In this document: in pieces, positions 3,329-52,551 of the stretch
How positions within the stretch are numbered: position 1 is the first letter of the stretch
Layout of the letters: each line of letters begins with the position of its first letter
NCBI RefSeq assembly: GCF_030028105.1
Contig: NC_092384.1
Location: 54,815,553-54,873,285, forward strand
Direction: 5' to 3'
From: Mobula birostris
Taxonomy: Eukaryota
DNA: 57,733 nt
Notes under the pieces: generated by a model
What the model was told of the DNA's origin: nothing
The model's database searches: none
Seen by the model: the letters and a program-made list of their open reading frames with translations, nothing else
Program-made: the position numbers and the translations under genes

Positions 3329-4563
3329 ACGACTCACTGAGAAATCTGTCAGTGAGAAATAATTACCCCAAGTATGTCCTTTAACCTCTTTACTGCTAGA
3401 AATGAACAATACATTGCTGCATTTTAATCAAAGCACATCAGTCAGTTCACTAAAAACCAGGCACTGGGTGCTTTAGATATGCCAAGGCCCAAAGCCCAGA
3501 TTTATATACAGAAACATTTCTCAAGAGGCTAGGCTGTATGTATCTCAGTTCAAATCTTATATTTGTTTTAATATCTCAGTGTATTTTGTCATTGTATTGA
3601 TCAGTATTTTTTTGCTATTAAACTTCTGCAAAATAACACACTTTGCAATTTTGTTCTTCCAAGACATTAGCAAATAATCTTGTAGATTTTTGGAAGTAAC
3701 TTCTATCTGAAACTTCAAAATGAGTTGCAAAATACAGATAACAGGGAATATATTGAGAGGGATTTGTTTTTCCCCAATTAGTTTTTAAAAATAAAAATAC
3801 TAGTTTGACCCTCACCCTCTTCCAGCTATCAAATCATTACACACAGGCAAAGAAATCCAGTTTATTCTATGCTGTTGCATTGATAAGGAAGTCATAATAT
3901 CTAAATCAAGACTCAGCATAGTATCTCATCAAATGTAAGAATGAAATCTACAGGATATTTACTTACTTCTGCATTTTGGACCAAGTTTAAGTTTATGGAC
4001 AAAAGTTATTGGCATATAATTTACAATACTATTTTACACATTAATATCCTGATTTTTTTCTTCATAGTCAAAAAGTAAAGATTATTATTTCTTTTCTCTG
4101 AAATGGTTATTCTTTTGACACATTTATTTAAAATTACTCAATCATTATGACAAGATTTGGGAAAGATCTGCTTAGTGATACTAGCGAAGAATAATTTATT
4201 TAGACTCTAGATAAGGGATCCTGTCTCTTTAAATACTTCTTCTTTAAATATATTTTAGGACATGACAAAGATTTCCCTATTTCCTTTTATGACTGCTTCA
4301 CTGAGCAGTGTAGTTCAGAGATCAATGCAGTGATTGGCAGCTAATGTATTTTCCCTGTTATGTCTTAGTAAATTCAGTCTGACAGCTGTTCTTACTGATC
4401 AAAATGGCAAAGGTGGTTTGATTTTTGTATATAAACTGCAGTAAATAGCACAGGGGAGATGTCTTAATTGTGTTTAATGACTTTAAATGGCAATACCCAG
4501 CAGATAAAAGTTTAAAGTTTAGTTGCACTCCTGGTGTCTAGCATTGTGCCCAAAGGTGTTTGA

Positions 4564-4693
4564 AGTCCTGATGAAGAGTCTCGAACACAAATGTCTTCTC
4601 TATAGATGCTGCCTGACTTACTGATTTCCTCTGGCATTTTGTACTGTATGTGCTACTCTGGATTTCACGCATCTGCAGAATTGCTTGTGTTTT
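4564..4693 (+). mobile_element. Solo PLE terminal fragment with decayed hammerhead
   Basis: agtcCTGATGAagagtctcgaacacaaatgtc...gatgctgcctgac...gcatctgcagaattgcttgtgttt is collinear with the 25 kb arm plus tail; the GAAA box is mutated. Confidence 0.75.
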
Positions 4694-9009: not shown

Positions 9010-10330
9010 GAATCAGACATACATCAGCTCTGGCACGTTTTGCAGGCCATTACTTCCTACAAAGCAAAGCCTAACATCCTGAATGGTGGTGATGCTTCAT
9101 TCCCAGATGAGCTCAATGTGTCTTTTTTTAACACGCTTTGAAAGGGAGAATAAAACTACGTCTGTGCAAATCCCTGCAGCATCTGGTGACCCTGTGATCT
9201 CTGTCTCGGAGGCTGATGTCGGAACATCTTTCAAAAGGGTGAACCCTCACAAGGTGTCAGGCCCTGATGGTGTACCTGGTAGGGCACTGAAAACCTGTGC
9301 CAACCAACTGGTGAGAGAGTTCAAGGACATTTTTAAACTCTCATTGCTGCAGCTGGAGGTTCCCACCTGTTTGAAAAGGGCGACAATCGTACCAGTGCCC
9401 AAGGACAGGATGAGCTGCCTCAATGACCGTCACCCAGCAGCACTCACGTCTACAGTAATGAAGTGCTTTGAAAGTATAACCATGGCTAGAATCAACCACT
9501 GTTTAAGAAACGACCTGGACCCACCGCAATTTGCCTATTGCCACAATTGGCCGACAGTAGATGCAATCTCACCGGCTCTGCATTCAGCTTTGGATCACCT
9601 GGAGAATTGTAATACCTACATCAGGCTGCTGTTCACTGATCACAGCTCAGCTTTCAACACAATTATACTATCAGTTCTAATCAACAAGCTCCAAAACCTG
9701 GACCTCAATACTTCCCTCTGCAACTGGATCCTTGATTTTCTCACCGGGAGACCACAGACAGTACGGTTTGGAAGTAGCATCTCCTCTCTGCTGACAATCA
9801 ACACTGGCCAATCTCAAGGATGCGTGCTTAGCCCACTGATCTACTCTCTCTACACCCATGGCTGTATGGCTGGATACAAATCAGACACCATCTATAACCC
9901 TGTCAATGACACAACTATTGTTGGCAGAATTTCAGATGGTGATAAGGAGGTGTACAGAAGCAAGGTAGATCAGCTGGTTGAGTGGGGTCATAACAACCAC
10001 CTTGCACCCAGGACATGCCCTCTTCTCATTGTTACCATCAAGGAGGAGGTATAGGAGCCTGAAGACACACACTCAATATTTTAGGAACAGATTCTTCCCC
10101 TCCACCATCAGATTTCTGAATGGGCAATGAACCAATATACACTACTTCATTTAATTTTTTTGCTTTCATTTTCTTCTTTTTTTGCTCTTTTTTGTCCTAC
10201 TTATCTAACTTCATATATCTTTCTTATTGTAATTTATAGTCTTTTAAAACTATTATATATTGCAATGCTCTGCTGCCACAGAACAACAAATTTCACCACA
10301 TATGCCAGTGATGGTAAACCTGATTCTGAT
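9010..10330 (+). mobile_element. Rex1/Babar LINE, 5'-truncated and internally deleted (RT pseudogene)
   Basis: ORF 9083..10054 has KVSGPDGVPGRALKTCANQL, CLNDRHPAALTSTVMKCFE, LLFTDHSSAFNTI and QGCVLSPLIYSLYT. The catalytic xADD is degraded to PVND, and the element ends in a ctgattctgat tail. Confidence 0.9.
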
Positions 10331-14077: not shown

Positions 14078-14515
14078 CATACATCCCCTTGCTAACTAAG
14101 CAAAACAACATACTAGAAATAGAGTTTTAGAAAAAAAATAACAAGTTACATCAAATGTGTTGGCATGATATATAAAAAACACCCAGGCTTCTAGTATGTT
14201 TTACGTCAAACATCTTAAGGCCAATGTAAATTAGCTGCAAACAAATGAGTAGATTATAAAGCTAAACTTGTCTCAGGTGCAAATGATTGGTTTCTATAAA
14301 GTTAGGTATTTATGCAAAGTCACAATTTATTGGAATGTTTTCTGAATGAAATGGTGCTTTTATTTAGTTATTTTTCATTCTTAAAGGAAACAATTTAATT
14401 CAATCAAGAGATTGTTTCAATTTATTTTTCTGAGGCAGCTGTATAACTATTAAAAGTGCTCCTAAAATAGATGTAATCTTAAATCTTAGTTTCCTTAAAT
14501 GTGTCTGGTAACTAG

Positions 14516-14638
14516 TTTTGATGAAGGATTTTCAACCTGAACTATGTTTCTCTTTCTACGAGTGCTGCCTAACCTGCTCAGAGTTTTCAGCTTTTTTCTG
14601 TTCTTATTTCAGATTTCAAGCATCTGCAGTTTTTGTTT
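14516..14638 (+). mobile_element. Old PLE terminal fragment with decayed hammerhead
   Basis: ttTGATGAaggattttcaacctGAAc...tgctgcctaacctgct...atttcaagcatctgcagtttttg. Confidence 0.6.
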
Positions 14639-15166
14639 AGTAAGCCAAAATGTTTCTTTGAGAGACTGCAATATTTCTTTTCACGAACACATCTAGTTAG
14701 CCTCAATGAATTTTTTATACTCTGCCTTAATATTTTGTTACAAAAACCAAATGAAGGGGATCATCTAGCTGCTGCATGAAGATTTTACATGGAAAGGACA
14801 TACAAACCCTAAATATCATATTGCGTCTATTACCTTTCAGATTCAGACTCTATCACACAGGGTCCTCATTTGCCTTTTGTAATTGAGGTCAATTTTAGGT
14901 AATTCTTTTGCAAAAGACATTTTTTGATTAAAAACAAGGTGTTAACTTAGCACATTATATTGATTCCTATACAAATCAACTGCTGTATTCTACTTAGCAA
15001 TTCTTCAAAGCCATTTTAAAATAAAAGAAGCACATTCATTAAAAATAACACAATACACAACTGCCACCAGAACCGCATGGTTTAATTCAGCAATGCAGCC
15101 GACTTTACACCACCAACAAATAAAACTCAATGGCTTTGTGAACTTCCAGGTAATACATTTTTTTAC

Positions 15167-18980: not shown

Positions 18981-21817
18981 ACCCCACAGAGTTTGAGGAA
19001 GAACCAAGTTAAGCACACAATAACAAAGGTATTACTCACAAAATATTTGCATTAAAAGTATATGTTCAAAGTGATTTATTGACATTTATAATAAGCAAAG
19101 ATATGAGAGTCGGGCGTGTGATGAGTGGTTCAGGCCCCAGATGTGAAACAATTGCAAATGCCATCAAAGAAAACTGACATATTATAAGACATGGCTTTTA
19201 GCAATCCATCATGAGAATGGTTGCATTGGCGCTGATGTCAATTTTATTGCATTAAACCAACTCTAAATAGTCCCGCGACAAGCTTTGTTTCTAACGATCT
19301 TGAAACAAAGAGAATGCTGCCGTGAATACACAAGACTTCGCTTTTCACAATCAAATACTTGCAGAACTTTTGAGTCTTTTATGACTGCACCTTCACCCCT
19401 TTCCAAGGATAAGAATTATAATATTACTATGCCAGAAACACTGCCGTGCAAAGCAGATGTGTTTCCAAATAAAGCAATGCAGAATTTCTCAGCATCTGGC
19501 CACAGGCTCATCCATGGATTTTGACAGCAAGACCTGAGGGATACCAAGATGATGAGGGGCAAAAAAAATGCAATACTTAAAAGTCTGTATTCAATCCATG
19601 TGCATATTGTGAGCCCAGAACTAGGGGTCAGGTCGATCAGAGCGAGCACTGTATACAAAAGAGCGAGAAACATTGGCTTAATGGATCTAATCTGCAAGGT
19701 GTTAAGGCAGAATGTGGTTGAAAGTTTATACTGAAACCCCAAAGGAACTCAATATCACAGAACTGATGGAGACTTACTGATGCTCTTTCACATGTGTGAG
19801 AGCCATTATAATGGCTGCTACTGCAGGAAGATTTTATTTTTAACAGTCTTTAATGCAGAATTTGTGGTCCAAAAGTGTTAGTGTGTAATTGTAGAATTCA
19901 CAATATTGCAGCAAATAGCTCCTGAAATACACACGATAGACACACAATAACCATTATTGTTCTTCACAATAGAAACATTACCACATTTTAATTTTAGCCA
20001 GCCGCTTATCGGGTTAAGCATTTCGAATGAAATCAGCTGTTACTTGCTATTGATATACTGTATTTAATTCAGCTGAAATATCTTGATTGTGAAATATCCC
20101 TGATCTGAGCTAGTAATTCATTTAATCAATAGGTTCAATGTAGACCTGGGGCATCACGCAAGCCTGTCAGGTCACATTCAAGCCTTTGATGTAACAAAAG
20201 CAATTATTACATTCCTGGTGATGAGCAGTACCTGTCTGCTGTACAACAGAATGCCGCCTGTATCAACATCCTTTTCGCTGTGCAGAGACCCTCTGGAAAA
20301 AAGAGACACACGATATTTCTACCTAAACATAAATATATCCTTGTAGCTGGCTGCCATATCTAAGCAGGTCCTAATAGAAACCACATCTCTCTTATGGTTC
20401 ATTGCTAACATTCATTTATTTGACTGTCTCTGTATAAAGCAAATCACTCTGCAGAAAATATATATCACTTAAACACGTGGTGGCTTTAGCAGCTCAGAGA
20501 GGCAATTTTTAAAATAATTTATATATCTACCTCTCTAAAACCGGTTAATCTTCAGGTTTCTGGTAAAATTAAAATGTACTATTGTTTCCATGGAAAAGAA
20601 TAACAATGGTTAGTGAGTGTCCATCATTTCAACGTCAGGGCTATTTGCCACAGTATTGTGAATCCTATGATCACACACCAACCCCTTTGGAACACAAAGC
20701 ATTTTCTGTACGTTATTAATTCTTCAGGTTACAGAAGAGAATTCACATAGATCTTTTTTGTCTAAAACGCAGCAGACTATCTGGAGAAGAAGAATTTCAG
20801 AGTTGTGTACTTTGATAATAAATAAACCTTCGAATGGAAGTTATAGATGAGACAGACAAAATGTTCCAAAGCAGTGGAAACCAACCAATCACTGAGTAAT
20901 TTTAGCCCGGGATTGATGAAGAAAGGTTGAGTGGAAATGCAGTGGAGTTAGGATAATACATTAAAACTTTTTCTTGTCTGGAATAATTCAGAAATACTCC
21001 CCTCAGCCTAAGTGAGTTCCACACTGAAAGAAATCTCTAAGGGTTAACAAAGTAATGAGAATTAGAAAATTTAAACCACTGTGCCAAAGAATGCATAAGT
21101 TAATAAGAGACAATCCTCCCTGCTAACATCGAATCATTCCTATAAATATAGAAAGCAATTTAATTATTTATCCTATTTATATATAAAGCAATTTAATGAC
21201 GACTTTTAAAAGATATGTTTTCATATAGGAATATTATCATTTAAGCTGGGGAAACTCTCCAGCCCCACAGCCCAAATTAAATTGGTTACTAACATGAATA
21301 AACAGAGTAAGCCAACTTCAGCCAATGCAGACAGCAGGAAAAGGGAAAGGGAGTACATTAGAGATTTCATCTGTGATAGGACCCATGCTCACACTCATTC
21401 TGTAACTGGCATCTGGAGCAGATTTGCTACAACAGACATTGAAGAACTAGATTACATCCAGTTAACTGAGCTCTAAACTGATTATGCATGTGCCAAACTA
21501 ATGGATTACATTTGCAAGAGGAAAAATAACATCCAATCAATCTCAATTACGGCAGGACCACACCAGCCCAGATAAACTTGAAAGTATCCAGCAACTACCC
21601 ACAACTGTCCCTCCTTGCCTTACCAACAGTTCTACAGAAAACAATTGGTATATTCATTCAGAAATAAAAGTAGCTGATAGAGAAATACCATCACAGCAAG
21701 GCAGCAAGTGTTAGAGAGACTGTAACATTTTTTTTTGAAGGTTTTCTGGCTCAGTATTTACTAATTTTAGAAAGCATTGGCCTTTACGTCTCCGTGGTTT
21801 CAGTTTGTTAAGTAAGA

Positions 21818-21950: not shown

Positions 21951-24900
21951 TAAGTCAACTGCCAGAGGATATTGGGTACAAATAGGGTGAAGTTCACCTT
22001 CTATGATGGGTGTGTGGGGTAGGGGAAGTAGCGCTGGGCAAACGAATGGACTGACTGAGAACAGTTTGACTGCCTGCTATTCCCCTGCTTTATACATGAA
22101 GACTGACCGTGCCTTATTCCTGCTGCTTGTTTTCACCCAATAGAGTTGGGCTGAAATGTGGTTTTCGGGGACTTTAGGAACAGAGGCTACCAGAGTAATT
22201 AACAAAAACCAGGCAAATGTAGTTAATCCCGATTTTAAAATCATACACTGTCTCTGTAATCTCATGTTTTATTGTAAATTCCTGACACCCACATTTGTAA
22301 CAGGAAATGCCTTTGTAAAACCATAAGGCTATAATTTTAGACGTCTGATTGCCATGGTGTTCCAATGCCTCTACTGGCAGGCCAGTGTAAATGTTTTGAG
22401 AAGATTAAAAGACACAGGAACTACATTTATACTGATGTAATTTTATTTATACAAGACTGGCTAAAAAAGTTGGTTTAATGGGATCGAAGATGGCTCCAAA
22501 ATCAATCATTTTACAAAGAAAAGTAGTATAGACGTCACAGGCAGATACACTGAGTTTTGGCTTGTTTTCCCTTCAAAAGATGAAAATCGACAAGTCCCAT
22601 CCCAGCCACCAGGAGGAGCAGTTTGTGCTTTCAGAATGCTCAACCACAGGAGAGGGGAAAAGGAGGTGAGAATGGTGGAGAAATCCATTTCTTAGACCTT
22701 CTCAAATCCTAGAGATCAGAGGATGAACAGCAGATGAAGGGGGGATTAAAGGCCTAAATGGAAACTGTAAAACTTTGAAAAAGTTAAACATTAATAATAT
22801 GCATAGGTTTAGCAATCTGCTATTTCTTTAACCCTAACAAAATATTTCGAGTAACTTATACAAGAAAACGGGTCAAAGATTAGAGTAAAATCAAAGATCA
22901 GAGCTAAAGCATTAGCATTAAATACTAAAGTGAAGTGCATTAAGAAGCAAGGAGTTTCGGCTTATGTGTATTTACATACATATATACACACTCACAAGCC
23001 CGTATGCATACGTACACACATGCATGCACTTCCACACACTTCTCCCCTAGCTGTTAAGCAACCCAATCCTTTTCATATCTCCATCCCATTCCCTTGTGAG
23101 CTGCCCAGGCTGACACTGGAATGAGGTTTGAGAGATTGTAGATGAACAATATCAACAACCTTTTGTACAAGCACTGAAATAAAACATTCAGATCCTGTCA
23201 TAGTTATTGAAAGTTTTGCACAAAGTAATAACGATGCCTGTCTTATCACAAATCTTTTTAAAGATCAAAGTTAAAATTCCCTTTCCATTTGATGCAACAA
23301 ACCTTCACCTGCTTCCTATCTTAAAACTTAGGCCCTCAAAAAAATAAAATATTCCATGTCTGCAAAAAAATGAAAAGCTCTCTATTAGATGTCCCAATCT
23401 TCTTCTACTCCAAAGGATAAAGGCACAGTGAAGATCCTGATCCCAGGGAAGCCAATTTCATGGCCATTTCATCCAATAATTTCACAAGTTGGCCGAACAC
23501 CTACTCCAGATGTGGCTTCAACCACAGCAAGATATAATTTCAAAAAACATATCCTTCCAATGATTATAATACAAATCAACATTTGGTTTGCTTTATCACC
23601 AGCAAACATGGTCTCTACAATTTTAATCTTTTACCTCATAATATTCCCATTAATTATTTGCTGTTCTCTACTTCATGATTTTAATATCTTACTTCAATCT
23701 ACTTATCTGCAAGATGAAACATTAAACTCTGGTCCTGTATGTGTATTCAAGTGTATAACCAATGTACTATTTAAACCTGCTAAGTAGTCCTATCTAATAT
23801 TTATCCCTGAGCTAACGCAGTTCAATATAGACTACTATTTTCTGATTCTTGTTGGTGTTTCTGTGATCTTATTGTTTGGTTACTTCAAAGTTATTTCATT
23901 GGTTGCTATGTACTTTCAGATGTCAAGGAATTATGAAAAGAGCTAGATTAATTCCAGGATGTTTCTTTAGAGTGTTTTCTGTGGCAATTATCATTCCACT
24001 CACCCGATATACCAACCAGTGCAGAGTTGAGTGATCACGGTCACTCAGTATTTGCATCTGGCTTGTCCAAACTCTGAAGATGTGGCTAAGCCAGAGGCAG
24101 TGTGAGCCACGGTGCTTTCTGCATGTCTTAACGATTTCAAATTCAGGCTCTTGGATGAGGGAAGAAAAGGATTCCATTTTATACACAACATCCCCCCTAA
24201 ACTCCAACGCAGCATTTTTTTCAAGCAGTTTAACTCAGGTTTTTTGTTGGTCCTACTTACCATTATGTTTTGAATTACAATCCTAGTTTTAAAGAAGGAG
24301 CCATAGGCACATATTCTGACATGCGTTTTGATTATTGTGTATTGTTAACAACTAGTAGATGGAAAGCAATTAAGCTCCATTTACTCCAAGTCAGAAAGCA
24401 GCAAACAATTAACGTGTTTGCCTTCTTTTCTTCCTTTTCCCACATAGCCATAAAAATCATAAGTTGCGTGAGATAGCACTCATTCCATACATTATTTACT
24501 AATGTCAATAACTGGTTAACTGTGGACTCATCCTGACCAAAATCCTAGATGACAAAAGATTGGAATGGTTTCTGTAAGATGTATGCTAAGGCTGCTTCTG
24601 CCCACTTATTGACCACAGGCAAGAAGTGGACAAAAATGTTATACAATCTAATGATCTTCCAAATCAATGGAAGTTCATCGATTTTTAAAAGTATGTTGTC
24701 CATTCGCTTCGGTCTTGAAAAGTTTGTTGTTTTCACAAAGTCCATGAAAAAAGAAGAACCCTGTGGGAGGGGGTTGGTGAATGTGTCCTTCTCACCTGCA
24801 TACACAATGACAGGTTCACATCAACCGTTTCAGTGCCCAGTCTCCATATTTCATGTTTATGCTGGTACACATGACTCTGGAATGGGGTGATATTCCAAGA

Positions 24901-25253
24901 TTAGCTGCTTACTTGGGAGATGCTAAAATCAACTCTACAAATGTGAAACATCATATGAATAAATAATTCACTCTTGTTAACTTAATTCCTGCCATTTGGC
25001 TGTTTTAGAAGCAGAAGTGCAAAGCCACAGTTTATTGTACAGGAGATGCATTTGTCATACTTCATTATTTAAAAATAGGACAATTTCTAGCATGTGGTAA
25101 TCTTTGTCAAGTTTTCATGTTCAAAGCAACTTTGTGTAGTCTTTTTTTTAAAACGCAAACAACAGGAATTCTGCAGATGCTGGAAATTCAAGCAACACAC
25201 ATAAAAGTTGCTGGTGAACGCAGCAGGCCAGGCAGCATCTCTAGGAAGAGGTG

Positions 25254-25291
25254 CAGTCGACGTTTCAGGCCGAGACCCTTCGTCAGGACTA
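25254..25291 (-). ncRNA. Minimal type I hammerhead ribozyme (identical mirror copy, sense to the ZFHX3 pre-mRNA)
   Basis: Exact reverse complement of 25327..25364; predicted cleavage after 25259 on the minus strand. Confidence 0.82.
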
Positions 25292-25326
25292 ACTGAAGGA
25301 AGGTTAGTCAGTTAGTCTCCTTCAGT

Positions 25327-25364
25327 TAGTCCTGACGAAGGGTCTCGGCCTGAAACGTCGACTG
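25327..25364 (+). ncRNA. Minimal type I hammerhead ribozyme (PLE-type)
   Basis: Sequence is tagtc-CTGACGA-agg gtctcgg cct-GAAA-C-GTC^gactg. Stem I is tagtc/gactg, the CUGANGA core is at 25332-25338, stem II is AGG/CCT and GAAA is at 25352-25355. Helix III is reduced to palindromic ACGU, and the GUC triplet predicts cleavage after 25359. Confidence 0.82.
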
Positions 25365-25950
25365 CACCTCTTCCTAGAGATGCTGCCTGGCCTGCTGCAT
25401 TCACCAGCAACTTTTATGTGTGTTGCTTGTGTAGTCTTATACATTTTGCCCATATCTGCTGTAGCACCACCACCAGAGTGAGGATTTCATTGAGGCATTA
25501 GATTGTACGAGCAATTTCCATTCTAACATACAGTAGTTGTCTAAAAATCCATCTGTGGTCAGGGGCACCAAGTATGCAATCAGCCCCCAAAATTCATTCC
25601 ATTCACTTCGATGGAACCGAAGTTCAGATGTAATGTGCAACATTCTGTTGCTACAAAACAGCACGTTTTGCACTACTGTCTAGAGTTGAATTGTTATGCA
25701 AAGTGATTTGTAATGCAAAATGAAAATTAGGGCAGATTGGTTCATTCTAAAATTGGATTTGAATTCCATTTATGTTTGTTGGTCCATCATGTGCACCTCT
25801 AGTTCCTAACTGTGCCTGCAATGTCAGGATGCATGAATTTGCTCGGGTGGTAACTAAAATGAGAAAGCATTTTATACTCTTCACAAAATTAAGAATTTGC
25901 TATACTGGGGAGGGGGGGAATCATTGCAAATTATTAGTTTGCACTATTAA

Positions 25951-26222
25951 ATTGGCGGCAGGGTAGCGTAGTGGTGAGTACAATGCTTTACAGTGCAGGC
26001 GACCCGGGTTCATTTCCTGCCACAGCCCGTAATGAGTTTGTACATTCTTCCTGTGACCGCACGGGCTTCCTCCGAGTGCTCCCTTTTCCTCCCACACTCC
26101 AAAATAGGTTAATTGATCTTTATAAATTGTCCCACGACTAGGGTGGATTAAATCAGGGGATTGCTGGATGGTGTGGCTCGAAGAGCCTATTCTGTGCTGT
26201 ATCTCAATAAATTTAAAAAAAT
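25951..26222 (+). mobile_element. tRNA-derived SINE (HE1/V-SINE-like)
   Basis: A box tagcgtagtgg, B box ggttcatttcc, central gggcttcctccgagtgctcc...ttcctcccaca domain and a CR1-like tail ending ctgtatctcaataaa. Confidence 0.85.
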
Positions 26223-27330
26223 AAACATGGTGCTTGAATTCAGTACTTGACTCCTGCATTCTGATAATCAAGCCTTTGGAATGATATTTCAAATATGTCA
26301 CAATAAAGAGCTCTGTTGCAGAGTTGTTCTTTGACAAACTATGCAGTCAGATTAGCACAGAATCAGCTCCCAAAATACAGAGGCTGCTCTGCGATCCAAT
26401 CTCTGCTTATTCTTAAATGAAACAGCTTTACTGGCAGGAAAGCGGCACTAAAAAAAATGTCCCAAAGCTACTGCCAAGTTGGGTTAACTACAAGTCTGTG
26501 CCTGACATTGAGTGGAAGGTAAGTGGAATAAGGCTGGTAGATTTATGGCCATTTGTACCTGATTGTTCATACTAAAGCCATTATGGAATGATTAGAGAAA
26601 AAGGTGAAGCTTTAAGTCCAGTGAAAATCAATACAACTGTCTACAGCAATTCAGCTGCCTGAGTCGAGTACCATTAACTGGATCTTTATCCCGTCTTAGG
26701 TTACAGGGAGCTGGGTACAAGCTTGCTGCATGCCCACCTGAACAGTTTTCTCAAGTCAGATTGTTAAGCTATTTTTCTCTGTTTTCATAACCATGACATT
26801 TTCCTTTTACAGTTGTTGAAGATGTGAAACTGTACCCAATATCACTGAGATTATTTGAAAGCTGTATGAAAACTACTTCTTAATGCTTCCCTCCAATTCC
26901 TACGGATCTCTCCTCTCCTCAATATATCATATTTGTCTGTAGCAGAATCTTTACCACGGCATCATAATATTGATATTCTCTGTCCGACACCAAAGCAAAC
27001 TGAAAATCACACAAAGTATCCTTGAAGAATGTCTGTATATTACACTCCTTATCCATAAATATCAATCATGCAATTTATTTAAGTACCATCAGAATTTTGG
27101 TCGTTTGTTTTACTTGTACCTTACAAATGTCAATTCTCATTTCAGCAGTAAAGTACCATGGATGAGGTGAGAAGGGATGGAGCAAATATGTTCTCCAAAC
27201 CAATTCCACTGAAGACTTTTATATCCATTCTCAGATTTCCTACACTTCCTTTTTCAAAGAAATAATCAGTAAGTTGATTAACAGCACAGACCAACACTGC
27301 CACAAAAATCAAACAACAAGCATGTTAATA

Positions 27331-31493: not shown

Positions 31494-32185
31494 AATGAGG
31501 TCACAATGATATGTCATGCTAATCTAACCAATTTCATATTAACTTTATGTATAGTTTTCTATAAATCCTAGGAGGGGCTGCATTGGGAGTCAACATTTGT
31601 ATTCTAGATTTACTTAATTGTGTAAAATGAATCAGAGTATTGATTAATGAGTCAGGCAATCAGTCATGTGAAGCCTGTTGAACAACAGCCTGAGGGGCCA
31701 GTCTTCAGAAAGCTTGATGTTGAACCCTGATTAAACAGGAAAGTTTTTCTTTAAATAAAACAAAATAATTTGCTCTCTTGTGTCACTCCCTTATGCTTAC
31801 ATTAAATGTGGAATCCTCAAGCCACCTAACCTTATTGGACCATTAGAACAGCCAGATGAAAAAAAAACAACTTTCGCCAGCTCCATATATCAAAATATTT
31901 CTAACTTCAGCAATAATTTTTCTTATCTAAGGACCCTTCTTCTAGGTCCATCATCTTCAATTTTACCTCAAACTTTCAAGGAAATCGGCTACATTCTTGA
32001 TGAATTTGAACAATACATGTTATTTAATTGCTATTTTTTATAACATCAAATATATAAAGAAGACCTTTGCAGACAACCTTTCACTGACAAATATTTGCTT
32101 TGAAAATAGTATATATTGAGAACATAATGACTGCTATTCACTATGATTCAGAAACACTGCATGGGGAGGATGTTACTCTCCTTAC

Positions 32186-32682
32186 CTTGTATAATTTCAA
32201 GCTGGCTTCATGCCTTGAGTTGACAGTGTGCAATCGCAGCTTCTCAATGCTATTGGTGTAGTAGTCGCATGCGTTGCATTTCAAGTGCACTGGGTTCCCA
32301 ATGGCTACACATTTCAGTCGCCACTCATTGGCCTTCCCTCCTTCCTTGATGTGTGCCACAAGCTGATATTTCTGTACATGCTTATCTGTCTTACAGTGCA
32401 ACTGGAAGTTGGCCTTGAGCTGGGTGTTGTAGCGGCACAGCTTGCACTGGTAGGAATCACCAATGACAGCCTTCCACTCCTCTTCGGGCAGGTGGCGCTC
32501 AATGTTCATGTGCAGACCCAGCGTCTCCAGGTTGTCCGTGGTGAATCGGTTGCAGACGGCACATTGAAAAAGCTTCAAGGAAGGGTCATTCGTGGTTGTG
32601 AACGTTTCGCCAAGGTTCATGAGTTCCTCTGACACCAGTTGCCCGCCTCCCAGTCGCATGTCAATAGGAATCTCACCGCCAA
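32186..32682 (-). CDS. ZFHX3: ZFHX3 second coding exon (equivalent to human exon 3, 497 bp)
   Basis: Encodes (V)[25 protein letters not shown]...[10 protein letters not shown]...[23 protein letters not shown]...[31 protein letters not shown]. Acceptor is ttttatgcAG|TT (AG = 32684-32683) and donor is AAG|GTAAG (GT = 32185-32184). The frame is continuous with the upstream exon. Confidence 0.97.
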
Positions 32683-33486
32683 CTGCATAAAACCAAAGAA
32701 TAAAAAGCAAGAATGAAGTGCTTGTTTACAGTGCCAGGATGTGATGTCCAAACCCTGAAAGAAAATCCTGAGTGATCAGCCTGAACTCTTCTTCTAAAGC
32801 CAATACTGACAATGTTGTATCTGTTATTAAGGTCCAATCTCGTATCATTGTCTAGGGATAAAATCAGCTGCATGGTAATGCTTTATGCAAATTAATTGGC
32901 CAATCTCCTGCAATGTTCAATCCGTAGATATGAGAGTGAGCGATGCCTATTTACTTGATTTGTTGATGGTAAGCCGTGCTTAACAGTTTACTTTATGCTC
33001 TTGTCCCTGACTACAAGACTGAGATGGTCAAAACTCATTTTACTTCTGATCAGTTATTAGTCTTCAGGGACAGTGATTCCTATCAGCTAATGCCAAATTA
33101 GATTTAAACTTTAGCTTGTACAGATTTCAAAGGTGAGCACGCAGTATGCAAGTAGAAATAGAAAGAAAATCTCTGAATATGGCCAAGCAAGCTCAAAATT
33201 GCTTCTATTTGTATTATTTGATTGCATAATTAAGTGTAACACTTTGTTAGGATGCAACCTAAAATGGAGCTTAAAAATATTTAATATTCATTTCAACTCC
33301 AAGGATATTGGCAATGGTGACTACTTTGATGTTACATAGCAATAAACCAGGACTGCAGAACACACTTCATACTAAAGTCATTTAAAAGAAACAATAGTTT
33401 AGTTCAACCCAGGAGTTGTTTTCTTTACTGTGGATTTTTCCATCTAACCCCCATCTTGGTTGAGGACTGCAAGATTTCCTCATCTT

Positions 33487-35377: not shown

Positions 35378-36466
35378 CTGTTTATTGACTACAGCTCAGC
35401 ATTCAACACAATCATACCCTCAGTTCTAATTTAAAAACTCCAAAACCTAGGCCTCTGTACTTCCCTCTGCAACTGGATCCTTGACTTCCTCATCAGGAGA
35501 CCACAGTCAATGCAGATTGGAAGTAACATCTCTTCGCTGACAATGAACACTGGTGCACCTCAAGAATGTGTGCTTGGCCCACTGCTCTACTCTTACACCC
35601 ACGACTGTGTTGCTAGGCACAGCTCAAATGCCATCTACAAATTTGCTGATGACACAACTATTGTTGGCAGAATTTCAGATGGTGACAAGGAGCGAGATAG
35701 TGAGTGGGGTCACAGCAACAACCATGCACTCAACTCCAAGGAACTGATTGTGGACTTCAGGAAGGGGAAGTCGAGGGAACACATACCAGTCCTCATCAAG
35801 GGGTCAGAAATGGAAAGAACGAGCAATTTCAAGTTTCTGGGTGTCAGCATCTCTGAGGAGCTATCCTGGGCCCAACATATTGATGCAATTACAAAGAAGG
35901 CACAACATCGGCAATTTTTTATTCGGAGTTTGAGGAGAGTTGGTACGGCACCAAAGGCACTTGCAAATTTCTACATATGTACCATGGAGAGCATTCTAAC
36001 CTCTGGAATGGAGGGGGCCACTGCACAGGATCAGAAAAAGCTGCAGATTCAGCCAGCTCCATCATGAGTACTAGACCCCCGCCCCCCGCCCCCCCCCCCC
36101 CCAGCATCGCGGACACCTTCAAATGTCGATGCTTCAAAAAGGCAGCATCCATCATTAAGGACCTCCATTACCCAGGACATGGCCTCTTTTCATTGCTGCC
36201 TCAAGGAGGAGGTAGAGAAGCCTGAAGACACACATTCTTCATTTCAGGAACAGATTCTTCCCGTCTGCCGCCTGATTTCTGAATGGACAATGAACCTATG
36301 AACACTTCCTCAGTATTTTGTTTTCCCTCTCTTTTTGCACTACTTATTTACTTTATTCTTATTGTGATTTATAGTTTTTATTACTATGTATTGTAATGTA
36401 CCACTGCTGCAAAGCAACACATTTCACGACAAATGCCAGGGATGTGAGACCTGATTTGGATTCTAA
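35378..36466 (+). mobile_element. Rex1/Babar LINE 3' fragment (same family as 9010-10330)
   Basis: ORF 35510..36067 has [36 protein letters not shown] and [14 protein letters not shown]. The 3' UTR resembles 10040-10330. Confidence 0.9.
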
Positions 36467-37200: not shown

Positions 37201-37500
37201 ATATATTGTGTTTCAAATGCTGGATCCATGCAGGTTAATACTAGGCACTTAATAATATATTTCAATTTAATCTAGCCCAGTACTACGAGAAAATGTTGGC
37301 TTCAGTTCCAAGTATATTTTATGGGAGTTGTGATCATCTTGTCAACACACAATGAGTCTTGCTTTTGGACACCTTCACTGATCTTGTAGAAATTTAATGA
37401 AGTGAGATTTTTTGTACTGTTGGCTCTGCATTTACCTGCTGATTACAGCACACATAGTTATTTATTTGCTCATGAGGTTCCTGCCAAATTAGCTGATGTA

Positions 37501-39090
37501 CAGTGGCATGCAAAAATTTGGACACCCCGGTCAAAATTTCTGTTACTGTGAATAGCTAAGCGAGTAAAGATGAACTGATTTCCAAAAGGTACAAAGTTAA
37601 AGATGACACATTTATTTAATATTTTAAGAAAACATTTTCATTTCCACCTTTTACAATTTCAAAATAGCAAAAAAGGAAAAAGGCCCGAAGCAAAAGTTTG
37701 AGCACCCTGTATAGCAGTACTTAGTAACACCCCCTTTGGCAAGTATCACGGCTTGTAAATGCTTTTTGTAGCCAGCTAAGAGTCTTTCAATTCTTGTTTG
37801 GGGGATTTTCGCCCAATCTTCCTTGCAAAAGGCTTCTAGTTCTGTGAGATTCTTGGGCCGTCTTGCATGCACTGCTCTTTTGAGGTCTATCCACAGATCC
37901 TCGATGTTTAGGTCAGGGGACTGTGAGGGCCATGGCAAAATCTTCAGCTTGCACCTCTTGAAGTAGTCCATTGTGGATTTTGAGGTGTGTTTAGGTTCAT
38001 TATCCTGTTGTAGAAGCCATCCTCTTTTCAGCTTCGGCTTTTTTTTACAGACTGTGTGATGTTTGCTTCCAGAATTTGCTGGTATTTAATTGAATTCATT
38101 CTTCCCTCTCCCAGTAAATGTTCCCCGTGCCACTGGCTGCAACACAAGCCCAAAGCATGATCAATCCACCCCCATGCTTAACAGTTGGAGAGAGGTTCTT
38201 TTCATGAAATTTTGCACCTTTTTTTCTCCAAACATACCTTTGCTCAATGAATTTTAACTTCATCAGTCCACAGGACTTGTTTCCAAAATGCATCAGGCTT
38301 GTTTAGATGTTCCTTTGAACCTTTTGAATAGAACTTTTTGGCCGCAATGAGCAAAGGTATGTTTGGGGGGAAAAAGGGTGCAGAATCTCATGAAAAGAAC
38401 ACCTCTCCAATTGTTAAGCACAGGGGTGGATCGATCATGCTTTGGGCTTGTGTTCCAGCCAGTGGCACAGGGAACATTTCACTGGTAGTGGGAAGAATGA
38501 ATTCAATTAAATACCAGCAAATTCTGGAAGCAAACATCACACCGTCTGTAAAAAAGCTGAAGATGAAAAGAGGATGGCTTCTACAACAGGATAATGAACC
38601 TAAACACACCCCAAAATCCACAATGGACTACCTCAAGAGGCACAAGCTGAAGGTTTTGCCATGGCCCTCACAGTCCCCTGACCGAGAATCTGTGGATAGA
38701 CCTCGAAAGAGCAGTGCATGCAAGACGGCCCAAGAACCTTACAGAACTAGAAGCCTTTTGCAAGGAAGAATGGGCGAAAATCCCCCAAACAAGAATTGAA
38801 AGACTCTTAGCTGGCTACAAAAAGCGTTTACAAGCTGTGATACTTGCCGAAGGGGGTGTTACTAAGTACTGCCATGCAGGGTGCCCAAACTTTTGCTTCG
38901 GGCTCTTTTCTTTTTTTGTTATTTTCAAACTGTAAAAGATGGAAATAAAAAAGTTTTCTTGCTTAAAATATTGAAGAAATGTGTCATCTTTAACCTTATG
39001 CCTTTTGGAAATCAGTTCATCTTTTACTCGCTTAGCTATTCACAGTAACAGAAATTTTGACCGGGGTGCCCAAACTTTTGCATGCCACTG
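37501..39090. mobile_element. Fold-back (palindromic) non-autonomous Tc1 element, IR/DR type, made of two inverted transposase 3' halves
   Basis: Ends are TA|cagtggcatgcaaaa and ttttgcatgccactg|TA. An inner direct repeat caaaagtttgagcaccct sits at 37691-37708. Left-arm (-) ORFs have VKHGGG.IMLWAC and WPSQSPDLN-IEDLW...GGVTKY. Right-arm (+) ORFs have VKHRGGSIMLWAC...QQDNEPKH...WPSQSPD...GGVTKY. Confidence 0.93.
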
Positions 39091-39489
39091 TATATGTATA
39101 TGTGAAAAGCAACTAATGTATGACGAACATGGCAGATTTTCTTGTTGGCAACACAGAGGGTGGTTGTTGGAAGACAACTTTGAATTCAAAGACTCTTTGC
39201 AGTTGTTTACGACATTTGTCATTTCCTGGCAGATTGTGAACACAATTCGGCATGTTTGCACTTATCAAAAGGCTTAGAACACTGGAGGCCTACAAATTGA
39301 AAAGCTTAGAAGGTACGTTCTTACCAAAGCAATTGGCTGAAGTAAAATGCTTAGAATTGTTTGGTGGAGAAGAATCCTAAACTATAAACTAGACCAGAGA
39401 GCCAAGAGAGAAATTGGTGAAAAGGAGATGGAAGTAACATAGGATGCATAGAATGGATGTTGAAAAATCAATCTTCAGTGATCACTCAG

Positions 39490-43262: not shown

Positions 43263-43393
43263 ATGCCACCAGAACATCAGACATCATTTAACAAAAATAC
43301 AAGAAATTCTGCAGATGCTGGAAATCCAAAGCAACACAGATAAAATGCTGGAAGAACTCAGCAGGTCAGCCAGCATTCGTGGAAATGAATAAA

Positions 43394-43430
43394 GAGTCGA
43401 TGTTTCAGGCCGAGATCTTCTTCAAGACTG
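43394..43430 (-). ncRNA. Mutated hammerhead motif in the PLE terminus (probably inactive)
   Basis: Minus strand reads cagtc-TTGAAGA-agatctcggcct-GAAA-C-ATC-gactc. Core C3 is changed to U, and the helix III palindrome is lost (ACAU). Confidence 0.6.
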
Positions 43431-43577
43431 GGAAGGAAGGGGGAAGGTGCCAGAATAAAAAGGTGGGAGGTGGGAAGGGAGGATAGCTGGAAAGTGACAG
43501 GTGAAGTCAGGCAGGTGGAAAAGGTAACGGGCTGGAGAGGAAATCTGATAGAAGAAAAGAGTGGACATTAGGATAAA

Positions 43578-49355: not shown

Positions 49356-49508
49356 NNNNNNNNNNNNNNNNNNNNNNNNNNNNNNNNNNNNNNNNNNNNN
49401 NNNNNNNNNNNNNNNNNNNNNNNNNNNNNNNNNNNNNNNNNNNNNNNNNNNNNNNNNNNNNNNNNNNNNNNNNNNNNNNNNNNNNNNNNNNNNNNNNNNN
49501 NNNNNNNN
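49356..49508. other. Assembly gap (153 N)
   Basis: Run of N. Confidence 1.
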
Positions 49509-49537: not shown

Positions 49538-49600
49538 GCCAGTCCTGATGAAAGGTCATCGGTCTGTTAAGTTGACTCTCTGTACTCTCTGTTGAAGCAC
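49538..49600 (+). mobile_element. Old PLE terminal fragment with decayed hammerhead
   Basis: agtcCTGATGAaaggtcatcggtctgttaagttgactc keeps stem I (agtc/gact) and the core but has lost GAAA. Confidence 0.5.
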
Positions 49601-50165
49601 AGTTCAAACTTTGTTTTTTTTTGTTCTCTCTCCTCATTCATCTCCACTACTTACACCCCTTCCAGAGTGCTGTTAACAAGCCTTCTATCACCTGGTGACA
49701 ACATCAATGTGTCATCAGTTTCTCTTGACGTATATCCTATCATTCAGACATTCTGTTTACTCCATCCTCCACCCCCATTTTGCCACAATTAAAATATACT
49801 TGCTTTCTTACTTATTACAACACAGAGGGTCATCAGGTCTGAGCCACCACACAGTGGAGCAATCTCATCAGTTTCATTCTCCCTCTTCATATTTCCTTAT
49901 AACTCTGCAAATTATTCTCTCTCATATGCCCATCAACTCTTCTTTAATTCTTTTCCCATGTAATTACACCAACGGATAATTTGAAAAAAAAATGAATTAA
50001 ACTATAGCATGCCTCTGGGATGCAGGAAGAAACTGGAGCACTCAGTGAAAACCAACACAATCAAAGTGAAAATGTACCAACTCCAAACAGATTGCAACTG
50101 AAAGAATGGTTCTTAACCCCCTCCGTCACTATGTCACTCATTGTGACACAGATTCTAAACTTTCC

Positions 50166-50290
50166 TGATTCTGATTAAAGTTCATCAACCTGAAATATGA
50201 ACTCTATTTTTTCTCTCCACAGTTGCTGCCTGACTGGCTGAGTATTTCTAGCATTTTAATTTTTTTTTGTTTCTGTATTGCAGATTCTTC
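50166..50290 (+). mobile_element. Old PLE terminal fragment with decayed hammerhead
   Basis: ttCTGATTAaagttcatcaacctGAAAtatgaactc...tctctccacagttgctgcctgactggctgagtatttctagcatttt. Confidence 0.55.
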
Positions 50291-51175: not shown

Positions 51176-52551
51176 CATATGCATATCCAAGGGGTTAAAA
51201 TTATTAAAATGTAAACAAATAACAGTGACAATGGAACAGGCTGAAGTGGGCTGTCCAAGTTACTTTTTCCTTGAAAGCTCACACACGAGTATTTTATTTA
51301 CTGACAGGCCAACTCCAACCATTCTCCACTCTTCATAAATATTGAGAAATACCAAAGTGTAGGGAGGTACTTTCTCAATATTTGCAGACATGTATAAATA
51401 TCTGGTTGGTCTTTTTTCAGTCAAACTTTTCATGTTCATATAAAACAGCCATTATAAAACTGGCAACAGCACTGGATTGCCAGAGACTGAGGCCCGTTAA
51501 CTGGTGAATGTACTTTCACCCAAGAAAAGCTGTTGAATGGCATCAATTACAGTCTTGTGCCATAAATTATTCAAACTCAAATTACATGGCATTGTAAAAG
51601 TGGATTAGAGCCCGTAGATCAGGTTCATCTCTGATTGGTAGGGCTGGGATTGTTTGCTCAAGGCTACTATCTAAACAGGTCAAAGAGACGCAAAGACCCT
51701 TAATAGAATTGCTTCTAATTATTATACTGCATCAATAATCTTTCATTACCAACTCATTCCATTTTATTCCTATGCAGATGAAACATGTAAATATGAAATC
51801 TCCAACCACCCCCCTTCCTTTTACACGTTACTGAGAACTCTACTAACTAACATAGCAAGTGATACATGAATGTTGCTTTTTAAATAATATACAAATTACA
51901 GTGCCACCCAGTCTCATAATCAAATTTCACATTAAAATTAATGGGCAACTTGTTGATAAAGGAAAGTCAGCCTAATTTACTGGAGACATTTTCGGAGAAA
52001 ATCTCAGTTACATTACAAAAACTGGTTTCAACATTTTTTTTTATAAATCGACAGCTTTTGATGTCATCTTTAAAACATAACAGTTTTTTTTAAAACCTTT
52101 GTTATTTTCACTTTATTTCCTGTCTGTCCATATGGCCAATTTAGATTAAACTGTACAATAGAGGTCAATGTATCCCTTTTTTAATACTGATTTTGGTTTA
52201 CATCACTGCTATTAATTTATAGACCATAACATCTCATGTTTTTATGAGAAGTGCAATATCTTACTTCATTCTGAATTTATACTGTATAAATTAAAATGCA
52301 ACCATGGACATGTTCTAGAACAGTTATCACAAGAAAAGCTTTGGAAACTTGCTCAATTCAAGGACAAGGCCTATCAAACCGAATGTTCACTTCTCAGTGA
52401 AAACAACCACCTAATGACTTTACTCTCTGTGATTTGTAAACAGGTGCTTGAAAAGCATTTCCTGAGCGATTGAAACAGATGTATTTATATATCAATAGTC
52501 ATAAAAATTTAAGTGGAAAATACTTGAAATAATGAAGTTATTATCTATTAC

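What the first reader, a model, noticed from the sequence alone, without database searches (positions are those of the whole stretch)
25132..25438. Young palindromic mini-retroelement with an intact hammerhead ribozyme on each strand
Seen in sequence: two 112-bp arms (25189-25300, 25318-25429) are reverse complements with one mismatch and a 17-nt loop. A 12-bp direct repeat (ttgtgtagtctt) flanks the insertion, and a short A-tail ends the minus-strand copy. Each strand carries tagtc-CUGACGA-AGG(gucucgg)CCU-GAAA-C-GUC^gacug, a complete hammerhead core whose helix III is reduced to self-complementary ACGU. Established: Penelope-like elements carry such minimal type I hammerheads in their pLTRs, proposed to cleave as dimers, and inverted pLTR arrangements are known. 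Inference: this ~290-bp non-coding unit is either a one-off fold-back insertion or a member of an unannotated retrozyme-like family. In the second case, both polarities would give the same rod-like, ribozyme-bearing RNA, reminiscent of viroid-like ambisense ribozyme RNAs. Near-identical arms and an intact TSD imply recent insertion.
Basis: partly seen in the sequence, partly recalled or inferred. Interest (0 to 1): 0.85.

Follow-up and report, generated by a model that had tools for sequence, protein, structure and literature searches.

The report
Head-to-head truncated Penelope-like insertion
This small palindrome is most likely one ordinary insertion of a very abundant Penelope-like retroelement tail that went in as two truncated copies facing each other, a layout already described for these elements, and its hammerhead motifs are intact on paper but buried in a perfect hairpin.

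Summary
Two 112-nt arms differ at one CpG site, are separated by 17 nt, and are flanked by a 12-bp direct repeat. A related organism's contig joins 25131 directly to 25427, which is an exact empty site. Two other organism labels carry both outer junctions.

Each arm is the 3' end of a very abundant repeat that has decayed copies elsewhere in the window. The 3' ends point outward. Only the left copy keeps a 32-33-nt terminal tail. The right arm stops at the best internal look-alike of the family terminus.

This layout (one TSD, head-to-head 5'-truncated copies, one-sided 30-40-bp tail, minimal hammerhead) is the published Penelope-like element insertion pattern (PMC3846280, PMC8557442, PMC4209133, PMC11167929).

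The hammerhead core is complete on each strand by a descriptor scan. No Rfam model finds it. In the palindromic RNA its fold is inaccessible.

A transcript of either strand carries one ribozyme and no direct repeat, so it does not meet the definition of a retrozyme. Whether the same centre exists elsewhere in the genome could not be settled.

Other first-reader notes in this scan report similar inverted pairs elsewhere in this genome; I did not check them.

Verdict: ordinary; interest 0.25.

The parts
25132..25143 (.). left copy of the 12-bp target-site duplication
   Evidence: direct repeat D1; the contig of run X10 has a single copy at the empty site.
25144..25156 (-). short A-run (A6 on the minus strand) plus a few bases at the 3' end of the left copy. 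This is where the cDNA would have been primed on the + strand.
   Evidence: sequence; other family copies also end in a T-rich stretch followed by A's.
25157..25188 (-). terminal 'tail' of the family (32 nt, or 33 counted between the two terminus-like 10-mers). Present on the left copy only.
   Evidence: three other copies carry it and the right arm lacks it; loose ends show family copies ending at 25156/25157; the right arm ends at the best internal look-alike (8 of 10) of the terminal 10-mer.
25189..25300 (-). left arm: a 5'-truncated family copy, sense on the minus strand
25259..25286 (-). minimal hammerhead motif of the left copy (core, helix II, GAAA, ACGU, C17). Predicted cut between 25259 and 25258.
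   Evidence: descriptor hit
25301..25317 (.). 17-nt centre. It holds two extra copies of a 7-mer (25303-09 and 25311-17) that also occurs at 25325-31 and whose complement lies at 25287-93.
25318..25429 (+). right arm: an inverted 5'-truncated copy without the tail, sense on the plus strand. Its last 3 nt overlap the TSD.
25332..25359 (+). minimal hammerhead motif of the right copy. Predicted cut after 25359.
   Evidence: descriptor hit
25427..25438 (.). right copy of the 12-bp target-site duplication

Best explanation
A single integration event of a Penelope-like element (PLE) RNA produced two severely 5'-truncated copies head to head.

Favoured route:
1. The element's endonuclease cut both target strands 12 bp apart.
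2. Each 3' end primed reverse transcription of the element's 3' region. The + strand end started at the distal start site, so it carries the tail and A-run. The - strand end started at the proximal start site 33 nt further in, so it has no tail.
3. Both cDNAs stopped within 17 nt of each other just upstream of the hammerhead.
4. One reverse transcriptase then ran on onto the other cDNA, which joined the two copies.
5. Repair filled in the TSD.

Shown: the anatomy, the TSD, the empty site and membership of the repeat family. Inferred: the order of events, the priming on both strands and the jump.

The resulting locus is probably inert. It is a non-coding palindrome, and any read-through RNA would fold into a 112-bp duplex that hides the ribozyme.

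Taking this route and the snap-back route (rival 1) together, I put 'one PLE insertion event' at about 0.8.
For: - One 12-bp TSD surrounds both arms.
- An 842-nt contig of run X10 joins 25131 to 25427 exactly.
- Contigs of X1 (0 mismatches) and X5 cross both outer junctions.
- The arms are identical except for one CpG transition.
- The 3' ends point outward. The left copy carries the family's terminal 32-33 nt, which three other window copies also carry and the right arm lacks.
- The right arm ends at the single best internal match (8 of 10) to the family's terminal 10-mer among all positions of the 174-nt monomer.
- The two best hits of the representative search are Mobula gene models that carry the repeat. 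Their similarity also stops at that proximal point, in 2 of 2 hits with E<1e-10. This is weak, because it could be an exon edge.
- Literature: the purified PLE protein cuts and extends both strands, starts internally at two sites, and the 30-40-bp tail is the stretch between them (PMC11167929, main text read). An inverted 5'-truncated copy, a one-sided tail and a TSD are typical of PLEs (PMC8557442 and PMC3846280 passages).
Against: - Two independent cDNAs ending within 17 nt of each other needs a common stop. I infer one only from window copies that seem to begin near the hammerhead, judged by eye from A1.
- The centre contains repeated 7-mers complementary to a nearby 7-mer. That looks like self-annealing and fits the snap-back route at least as well.
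- The repeat was not linked to a reverse transcriptase/GIY-YIG ORF. No such ORF lies in the window. The representative search found none: 5 hits at E<=1e-3, none with RT or GIY-YIG domains.
- Contigs cover the centre at about 9 times (X1) and 60-75 times (X5) the single-copy depth, with several indel variants (table 4). A unique one-off centre does not predict this.
Confidence: 0.45

Rival explanations
1. One PLE insertion event in which a single cDNA snapped back on itself. The + strand end primed on the A-run and copied about 150-170 nt of RNA. The nascent cDNA then folded back at a short inverted repeat just upstream of the hammerhead and copied itself for 112 nt. Its end joined the other target end through a 3-nt overlap.
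For: - The palindrome is near-perfectly symmetric and the arms were identical at origin.
- The + strand from 25144 to 25429 reads as one continuous cDNA.
- The centre holds three copies of a 7-mer whose complement lies 10 nt upstream.
- A 5-bp stem is predicted inside the centre.
- The right arm and the TSD share 3 nt.
- PMC3846280 (passage) infers self-priming from palindromes at inverted PLE junctions.
Against: - The last bases before the second arm pair only weakly with the template next to the copied stretch: 3 Watson-Crick and 2 G.T pairs, with a 1-nt bulge.
- This route treats as coincidence, roughly 1 in 20-30, that the second arm ends at the best look-alike of the family terminus.
Confidence: 0.33
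2. The centre was already present in the RNA template. The unit would then be a copy of a source that carries the inverted pair, either a palindromic non-autonomous element or a master PLE with an upstream inverted pLTR. In that case a small family shares this junction.
For: -, table 4: contigs cover positions 25309-25315 at summed depth 99-124 in X1 (single-copy about 11) and 310-391 in X5 (single-copy about 5).
- At least four single-contig indel variants occur in X1. One X5 variant has depth 39.8.
- Depth there is 0 in X10, which lacks the insertion.
- Internal initiation of reverse transcription (PMC11167929) would allow a copy to start at an upstream pLTR.
Against: - The contigs could not be read, so they may be independent inverted pairs formed at the same hot spot in a subfamily that is rarer in X10. 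Loose ends at 25302 number 133 in X1, 184 in X5 and 29 in X10.
- Summed contig depth is not a copy number, and chimeric library reads of a repeat at 1e5-1e6 depth could assemble.
- Reverse transcription through a 112-bp perfect RNA hairpin is unfavourable.
- The copy ends flush with the tail-less terminus without any source flank.
- Exact look-ups of 6 short ORFs of the unit found none in the protein collection.
- The 30-nt centre string had 0 matches in metagenome contigs. That collection is unlikely to hold this genome, so the blank says little.
Confidence: 0.12
3. Two steps. An ordinary 5'-truncated insertion of the left copy came first. A later DNA-level inverted duplication (replication template switch or hairpin repair) made the right arm.
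For: Palindromes can arise by fold-back replication errors. A possible 6-nt indel variant of the centre exists as one contig in X1 (table 4), so the centre may have changed after insertion.
Against: - The duplication would have to end exactly at the element/TSD boundary.
- No intermediate state was seen. A and B both carry the right junction, and C has a clean empty site.
- The right arm ends at a terminus-like site.
Confidence: 0.05
4. Assembly artefact: the palindrome is not in the genome as written.
For: No listed contig bridges the whole unit. PLE inverted structures are known to trouble assemblies (PMC8557442 passage).
Against: - Short-read contigs of two organism labels cross both outer junctions: X1 at 24300-25169 and 25405-26028 with 0 mismatches, X5 at 24300-25171 and 25404-26009.
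- Contigs cover the centre in both.
- The gap in the X10 contig equals the unit length of 295 nt.
Confidence: 0.02

Closest known systems
Penelope-like element insertions with an adjacent inverted 5'-truncated copy (head-to-head pLTRs, one TSD, one-sided 30-40-bp tail): Arkhipova et al. 2013 (PMC3846280), Craig et al. 2021 (PMC8557442)
   Same: One TSD around the whole unit (12 bp here; 8-10 bp in the rotifer examples). The 3' ends point outward. Both copies are 5'-truncated. There is a palindromic junction. An extension of about 31-40 bp is present on one side only (32-33 nt here). The terminal repeat carries a hammerhead motif.
   Different: Both copies are cut down to 112 and about 145-170 nt, so no ORF or full pLTR remains. 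The host is probably a cartilaginous fish, since the family is found in Mobula gene models. Linkage of the repeat to a PLE ORF was not shown here.
Minimal PLE hammerheads (min-HHR), Cervera & de la Pena 2014 (PMC4209133)
   Same: CUGANGA core. An unpaired base between positions 9 and 10.1. GAAA followed directly by a self-complementary 15.2-16.2 step, with no helix III loop. A short helix I of 5 bp. The paper also reports pairs of such motifs 100-700 bp apart on opposite strands.
   Different: This copy has G10.1.U11.1 instead of the conserved G-C. C at that place carries 21%, 18%, 72% and 77% of family depth in X1, X5, X10 and X11 (position 25351). Helix II is only 3-4 bp, against 6-8 bp in the described families. 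Activity is untested.
PAc (Poseidon of Anolis) in vitro integration, PMC11167929
   Same: Both target strands are cut and extended. There are two internal start sites for reverse transcription, and the tail lies between them. The hammerhead lies a few tens of nt upstream of the start sites. The ribozyme is not needed for insertion.
   Different: The start region there is described as an AC-rich stem-loop in the ORF. Here the two termini are GT-rich on the sense strand, and no ORF reading was established. The text I read does not discuss inverted pairs, so the link to head-to-head pairs is my inference.
L1 twin priming (5' inversions)
   Same: The second target strand primes on the same RNA, giving an inverted 5' segment inside one TSD.
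   Different: Twin priming joins two different, adjacent parts of the RNA. Here both arms are the same part, which gives a true palindrome.
Non-LTR retrozymes (PMC7229834; bioRxiv 10.64898/2026.07.22.740005)
   Same: Short non-coding, hammerhead-bearing repeats related to PLE pLTRs. Solo monomers are common.
   Different: Retrozymes are tandem direct repeats whose two same-strand ribozymes release a unit that circularises. Here the repeats are inverted, with one ribozyme per transcript.

Membership tests
Penelope-like element insertion (head-to-head inverted arrangement) | Target-site duplication flanking the whole inverted unit | tested here: met
   12-bp repeat. Exact empty site in the X10 contig.
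Penelope-like element insertion (head-to-head inverted arrangement) | 5'-truncated copies with 3' ends outward | tested here: met
   The conserved family terminus lies at the outer end of the left copy. The alignment with 5 other window copies shows the shared 3' end.
Penelope-like element insertion (head-to-head inverted arrangement) | 30-40-bp 'tail' present at one end only | tested here: met
   32-33 nt are present on the left copy and absent from the right arm. The right arm ends at the best look-alike of the terminus.
Penelope-like element insertion (head-to-head inverted arrangement) | The repeat is the terminal part of an element encoding a reverse transcriptase and a GIY-YIG endonuclease | not testable with these tools
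   No such ORF adjoins any copy in the window. The RVT_1 ORF at 9083-10054 is not next to a copy.
Hammerhead ribozyme, minimal PLE type | Conserved core C3-A9, G12-A14, A15.1-U16.1, H17 | tested here: met
   Descriptor hits at 25332-25359 (+) and 25286-25259 (-). Shuffles gave a mean of 0.01.
Hammerhead ribozyme, minimal PLE type | Unpaired base between 9 and 10.1; self-complementary 15.2-16.2 | tested here: met
   A at 25339; the step at 25355-25358. Criteria taken from a PMC4209133 passage.
Hammerhead ribozyme, minimal PLE type | G10.1-C11.1 pair | tested here: not met
   This copy has U at 25351, giving a G.U pair. C is a family variant at that place (table 3).
Hammerhead ribozyme (Rfam Hammerhead_1, HH9, HH10 and related models) | Match to the covariance model | tested here: not met
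   0 matches at gathering score on the whole window. No hammerhead family among the 8 matches at E<=10 on 24900-25700. This is expected for motifs without helix III.
Hammerhead ribozyme, minimal PLE type | Self-cleavage after C17, as a dimer or with protein | not testable with these tools
   Only energies are available. The hammerhead fold is -7.7 against an MFE of -12.2 for the monomer. The double hammerhead is -12.9 against a dimer MFE of -32.7.
Non-LTR retrozyme | Two or more direct (tandem) repeats, each with a same-strand hammerhead, bounding a unit that is released | tested here: not met
   Only an inverted pair is present. The sole direct repeat is the TSD. No tandem copy was found in the window.
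Non-LTR retrozyme | Circular RNA of unit length | not testable with these tools
   No listed holder is on record as RNA.
Viroid-like ambisense ribozyme RNA | A replicating circular RNA with a ribozyme in each polarity | tested here: inconclusive
   A motif on each strand follows trivially from the palindrome. There is no evidence of RNA, and the fold hides the motif.

The most novel reading that the evidence does not exclude
The inverted pair is not a dead end. The subfamily that expanded in organisms A and B has a short inverted repeat just upstream of its hammerhead. This would make head-to-head pairs form again and again at the same spot, or would let such pairs be copied as units. The genome would then hold a set of near-identical perfect hairpin loci. 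When these are transcribed within introns, they would yield long double-stranded RNA matching a currently active Penelope-like family, a ready source of small RNAs or RNA-editing targets directed at that family.
Probability: 0.1. Interest if true: 0.6.

Novelty: new member of a known kind. Interest (0 to 1): 0.25.

Why it matters
In itself it matters little. It is one more inverted, truncated Penelope-like insertion, lying downstream of the zinc-finger (ZFHX3/4-like) ORFs on the minus strand; whether it sits in an intron was not shown.

Its value is as a clean miniature of the integration product:
- An exact empty site exists in a relative.
- The arms are still identical.
- The two outer ends sit at two look-alike termini 33 nt apart.

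That pattern is what cutting and priming on both target strands, seen in vitro for an anole PLE, would leave behind. It suggests a simple genome-wide test of how PLEs make their head-to-head repeats and their one-sided tail.

It also shows that a complete-looking hammerhead in such a locus should not be read as an active ribozyme.

Tried and rejected
Searches that gave nothing useful:
- Rfam, both at gathering score and at E<=10, found no hammerhead. The hits at E<=10 (MIR2646, PrrB_RsmZ, rliD, mir families) only reflect the hairpin.
- The 30-nt centre string had 0 matches in metagenome contigs.
- A 23-nt hammerhead string had 0 matches in metagenome, genome (bacterial/archaeal) and viral contigs. 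These collections are unlikely to hold this genome, so the blanks mean little.
- The search of earlier findings by sequence was blank.
- Exact look-up of 6 short ORFs of the unit found none in the collection.
- The representative search with the 55-aa open frame of the left copy was meant to reach a PLE ORF. It gave 5 hits at E<=1e-3. The top two are Mobula gene models with the repeat as a coding tail (MENTAL domain in one). The other three are repetitive proteins without RT or GIY-YIG domains.
- Pfam on 16 window ORFs found host zinc-finger exons and LINE-type RT pieces, but no PLE ORF.

Caution on the many 'skip' joints (15 listed, 1000 more not shown). I first took them as proof of many other palindromic loci. 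I now treat them cautiously. Most are marked 'between: not known'. Subfamily divergence pushes their coordinates to 25275-25292 / 25328-25339. Rare chimeric reads of a repeat at 1e5-1e6 summed depth could also assemble.

Rejected idea: that the copies start at the ribozyme's cut site. Both arms run about 40 nt past it.

Papers:
- PMC4209133: passages and section 5.
- PMC8557442, PMC3846280, PMC7229834, PMC6765202: passages only.
- PMC11167929: whole main text.
- bioRxiv 10.64898/2026.07.22.740005: abstract and passages.
- Lunse et al. (PMC5785218): not held. I saw it only as a reference entry in PMC6765202.

Supplements were not opened. Supplementary figures S2-S6 of PMC4209133 (vertebrate motif families, cleavage assays) and S1-S2 of PMC11167929 (start sites, tails) may bear on the motif and tail comparisons.

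I ran no literature search specifically for miniature inverted PLE pairs beyond, so I make no claim that such units are unpublished.
Full report
OBSERVATION
The repeat finder reports inverted arms at 25189-25300 and 25318-25429. They are 112 nt long, 99% complementary and separated by 17 nt. A 12-nt direct repeat lies at 25132-25143 and 25427-25438. The single arm difference is C at 25219 against A at 25399 on the + strand, in a CpG/CpA context. That is what a methyl-CpG deamination after insertion would leave. A T6A4 run follows the left direct repeat.

ANATOMY
The arm is not unique DNA.
- blastn of the unit against the window finds diverged copies at 43292-43429 (79% over 142 nt) and 4594-4692 (74% over 99 nt).
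- nhmmer with the left copy finds 6 places: the two arms, 43291-43450 (E 2.6e-15), 4543-4692 (1.1e-09), and weaker ones at 14491-14642 (0.0067) and 50153-50264 (0.19).
- In the alignment of these, plus a fragment at 49541 (A1), all copies that reach the end share one terminus. That shared end is therefore the 3' end of a retroelement, and its sense strand carries the hammerhead-like string.
- In the finding, the left copy is sense on the minus strand. It keeps the full terminus (down to about 25157) plus an A-run.
- The right arm is sense on the plus strand and stops 32-33 nt short of the terminus.
- The two copies are thus head to head, 3' ends outward, both 5'-truncated, inside one direct repeat.
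- The 10-mer at which the right arm ends is the best internal match (8 of 10) to the family's terminal 10-mer among all positions of the 174-nt monomer.
- The centre is not random. A 7-mer occurs at 25303, 25311 and 25325, and its complement lies at 25287.

COMPARATIVE EVIDENCE
Twenty public runs hold part of the 1.2-kb stretch around the unit. I laid Logan contigs of four runs on 24300-26300.
- X1 (organism A, possibly the source sample) covers 24300-25169 and 25405-26028 with 0 mismatches.
- X5 (organism B) covers 24300-25171 and 25404-26009.
- So both outer junctions exist in two independent short-read assemblies.
- X10 (organism C): one 842-nt contig lies on 24514-25131 and, without a break in the contig, on 25427-25660. 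This is an exact empty site lacking 295 nt, which is the unit plus one repeat copy.
- X11 (organism D): the contigs stop at 25131 and restart at 25446. That is compatible with an empty site but does not show one.
- Flank mismatches are 23 of 1478 (1.56%) for A-B, 26 of 852 (3.05%) for A-C and 46 of 943 (4.88%) for A-D.
- The insertion is therefore younger than the split from C and older than the A-B split.
- One arm difference in 112 nt fits that age (P of at most one difference is 0.48 at the A-B rate).
- No listed contig bridges the whole palindrome, so long-read support is still missing.

THE FAMILY
- Summed contig depth over 25104-25438 is 6e5 to 6e6 in X1, against about 11 on the flanks. 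The picture is similar in the other three runs (table 2).
- Of 70,268 X1 contigs laid on the 2-kb stretch, 11,493 are at least 99% alike. A second repeat at 25908-26242 takes a small part of these.
- The tool warns that depth is not copy number. Even so, the family is clearly very abundant and recently active.
- The 55-aa open frame of the left copy hit two gene models of Mobula hypostoma and M. birostris at 92% and 74% identity, where the repeat forms a coding tail.
- The family therefore lives in devil rays and mantas, and the window probably comes from a related cartilaginous fish.

THE HAMMERHEAD
- A descriptor built on the published minimal motif required: the core, an optional bulge, helix II of at least 3 bp, GAAA, a paired 15.2-16.2 step with a 0-6-nt loop, U16.1, H17, and helix I of at least 4 bp.
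- It finds exactly two sites in the window, one per arm. Block shuffles gave a mean of 0.01 (200 shuffles, maximum 1).
- The copy shows the bulged base after A9 and the self-complementary step that Cervera and de la Pena list as hallmarks (PMC4209133 passage).
- However, it has G.U where they stress G10.1-C11.1. C at that position carries 21%, 18%, 72% and 77% of the family depth in X1, X5, X10 and X11 (position 25351).
- All five older window copies have broken cores (A1), so inserted copies are not under selection.
- Rfam finds no hammerhead at gathering score or at E<=10.
- Thermodynamically the hammerhead fold of a 53-nt segment is -7.7 kcal/mol against an MFE of -12.2.
- The domain-swapped double hammerhead is -12.9 against a dimer MFE of -32.7.
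- The RNA of the whole unit folds into a -239.6 kcal/mol hairpin (shuffles -84.2 +/- 5.0, z -30.8). In that hairpin the helix II pairs have probabilities of 2e-25 to 2e-20.
- Each transcript, of either strand, contains one sense hammerhead and its perfect antisense.

WHAT IS KNOWN
- PLE termini carry minimal hammerheads proposed to act as dimers, with low activity in vitro. Pairs 100-700 bp apart on opposite strands were already noted (PMC4209133, passages and section 5).
- PLE insertions are highly 5'-truncated. They often have an inverted 5'-truncated copy alongside, and carry a 30-40-bp tail at one end only (PMC8557442 passages).
- Rotifer examples show inverted pLTRs within 8-10-bp TSDs, a 31-bp tail on one inverted pLTR, palindromes at the junction, and head-to-head as the commonest form (PMC3846280 passages).
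- A purified anole PLE protein cuts and extends both target strands. It starts reverse transcription internally at two sites with the tail between them. Its hammerhead needs the protein and is dispensable for insertion (PMC11167929 main text).
- Every anatomical feature of the finding maps onto this description. What is unusual is only how short both copies are.

MECHANISM
I put about 0.8 on a single PLE integration event. Two routes fit.

(a) Priming on both cut strands.
- The + strand end starts at the distal site and the - strand end at the proximal site. Both cDNAs stop just upstream of the hammerhead, and one polymerase runs on onto the other cDNA.
- This route explains the one-sided tail and the terminus-like end of the right arm. 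It needs no homology at the centre.
- It does need a common stop.

(b) Snap-back of one cDNA on itself.
- This route gives the symmetry for free and fits the 7-mer repeats at the centre.
- It treats the right arm's end as chance, and the pairing available for priming is weak.
- I favour (a) slightly, 0.45 against 0.33.

A later DNA-level duplication (0.05) would need a breakpoint exactly at the TSD. An assembly artefact (0.02) is contradicted by the junction contigs and the 295-nt gap.

THE FAMILY READING
- The unit fails the defining feature of retrozymes, which is direct repeats with same-strand ribozymes.
- The viroid-like analogy rests only on the palindrome.
- One result remains unexplained and keeps a related idea alive at 0.12. 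Contigs cover the 17-nt centre at summed depths of 99-124 (X1) and 310-391 (X5). There are at least four single-contig indel variants in X1, one of which lacks 6 nt at 25312. Depth there is 0 in X10 (table 4).
- This could mean paralogous loci with nearly the same centre. It could equally mean independent pairs formed at one hot spot in a subfamily that is rarer in C: loose ends at 25302 number 133 (X1), 184 (X5) and 29 (X10).
- Other first-reader notes in this genome report inverted PLE pairs of 220 to 1754 letters, with single TSDs of 14-15 bp where the titles give one. They are unchecked. If right, they favour a recurrent mechanism with variable products.

VERDICT
The element is a new instance of a known kind, of low interest in itself. 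It does offer a usefully clean example for testing how PLEs build their inverted repeats.

Noticed in passing
window 37496-39095: Large nested fold-back. Inverted arms of 66-278 nt at 88-96% complementarity surround a 130-nt centre. An earlier first-reader note calls it a Tc1 element built from two right halves. I did not check the Tc1 assignment.
   Followed up: partly
window 52541-55201 (-) and 32141-32710 (-): Long ORFs with C2H2 zinc fingers of the ZFHX3-like type (Pfam PF24056, E 1e-15 in the second). They are probably exons of a zinc-finger homeobox gene on the minus strand. The palindrome lies about 6.7 kb further along that strand. No exon-like ORF was found below 32 kb: 0 of 10 ORFs had a Pfam hit.
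   Followed up: partly
window 9083-10054 (+) and 35510-36067 (+): Reverse-transcriptase ORFs: RVT_1 at E 9e-16, and a weaker RT piece with an ALKBH8_N match. They are probably LINE remnants. Neither is adjacent to a copy of the hammerhead family.
   Followed up: no
window 25908-26242: A second high-copy repeat only 470 nt from the palindrome. Summed contig depth is 5e3-5e4 in all four runs, and most family copies differ from the window at many positions (tables 2-3).
   Followed up: no
window 49356-49508 and 49541-49580: A run of 153 N is followed directly by a decayed copy of a related hammerhead-bearing repeat in which GAAA is lost. The N run was left alone.
   Followed up: no
P0001 and P0002 (Mobula hypostoma XP_062913069.1, M. 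birostris XP_072132000.1): Two annotated ray proteins end in about 40 residues translated from this repeat family. One is a STARD3NL isoform with a MENTAL domain. This is either exonisation of the repeat or an annotation artefact.
   Followed up: partly
window 19861-19996 and 20564-20698: Diverged inverted repeat (76-81% complementary) with arms about 570-720 nt apart, possibly terminal repeats of an old DNA transposon.
   Followed up: no
run X9 (organism B): A run guessed to be RNA holds 0.42 of the sampled words of 24700-25900. This could be intronic read-through of the locus or DNA carry-over.
   Followed up: no
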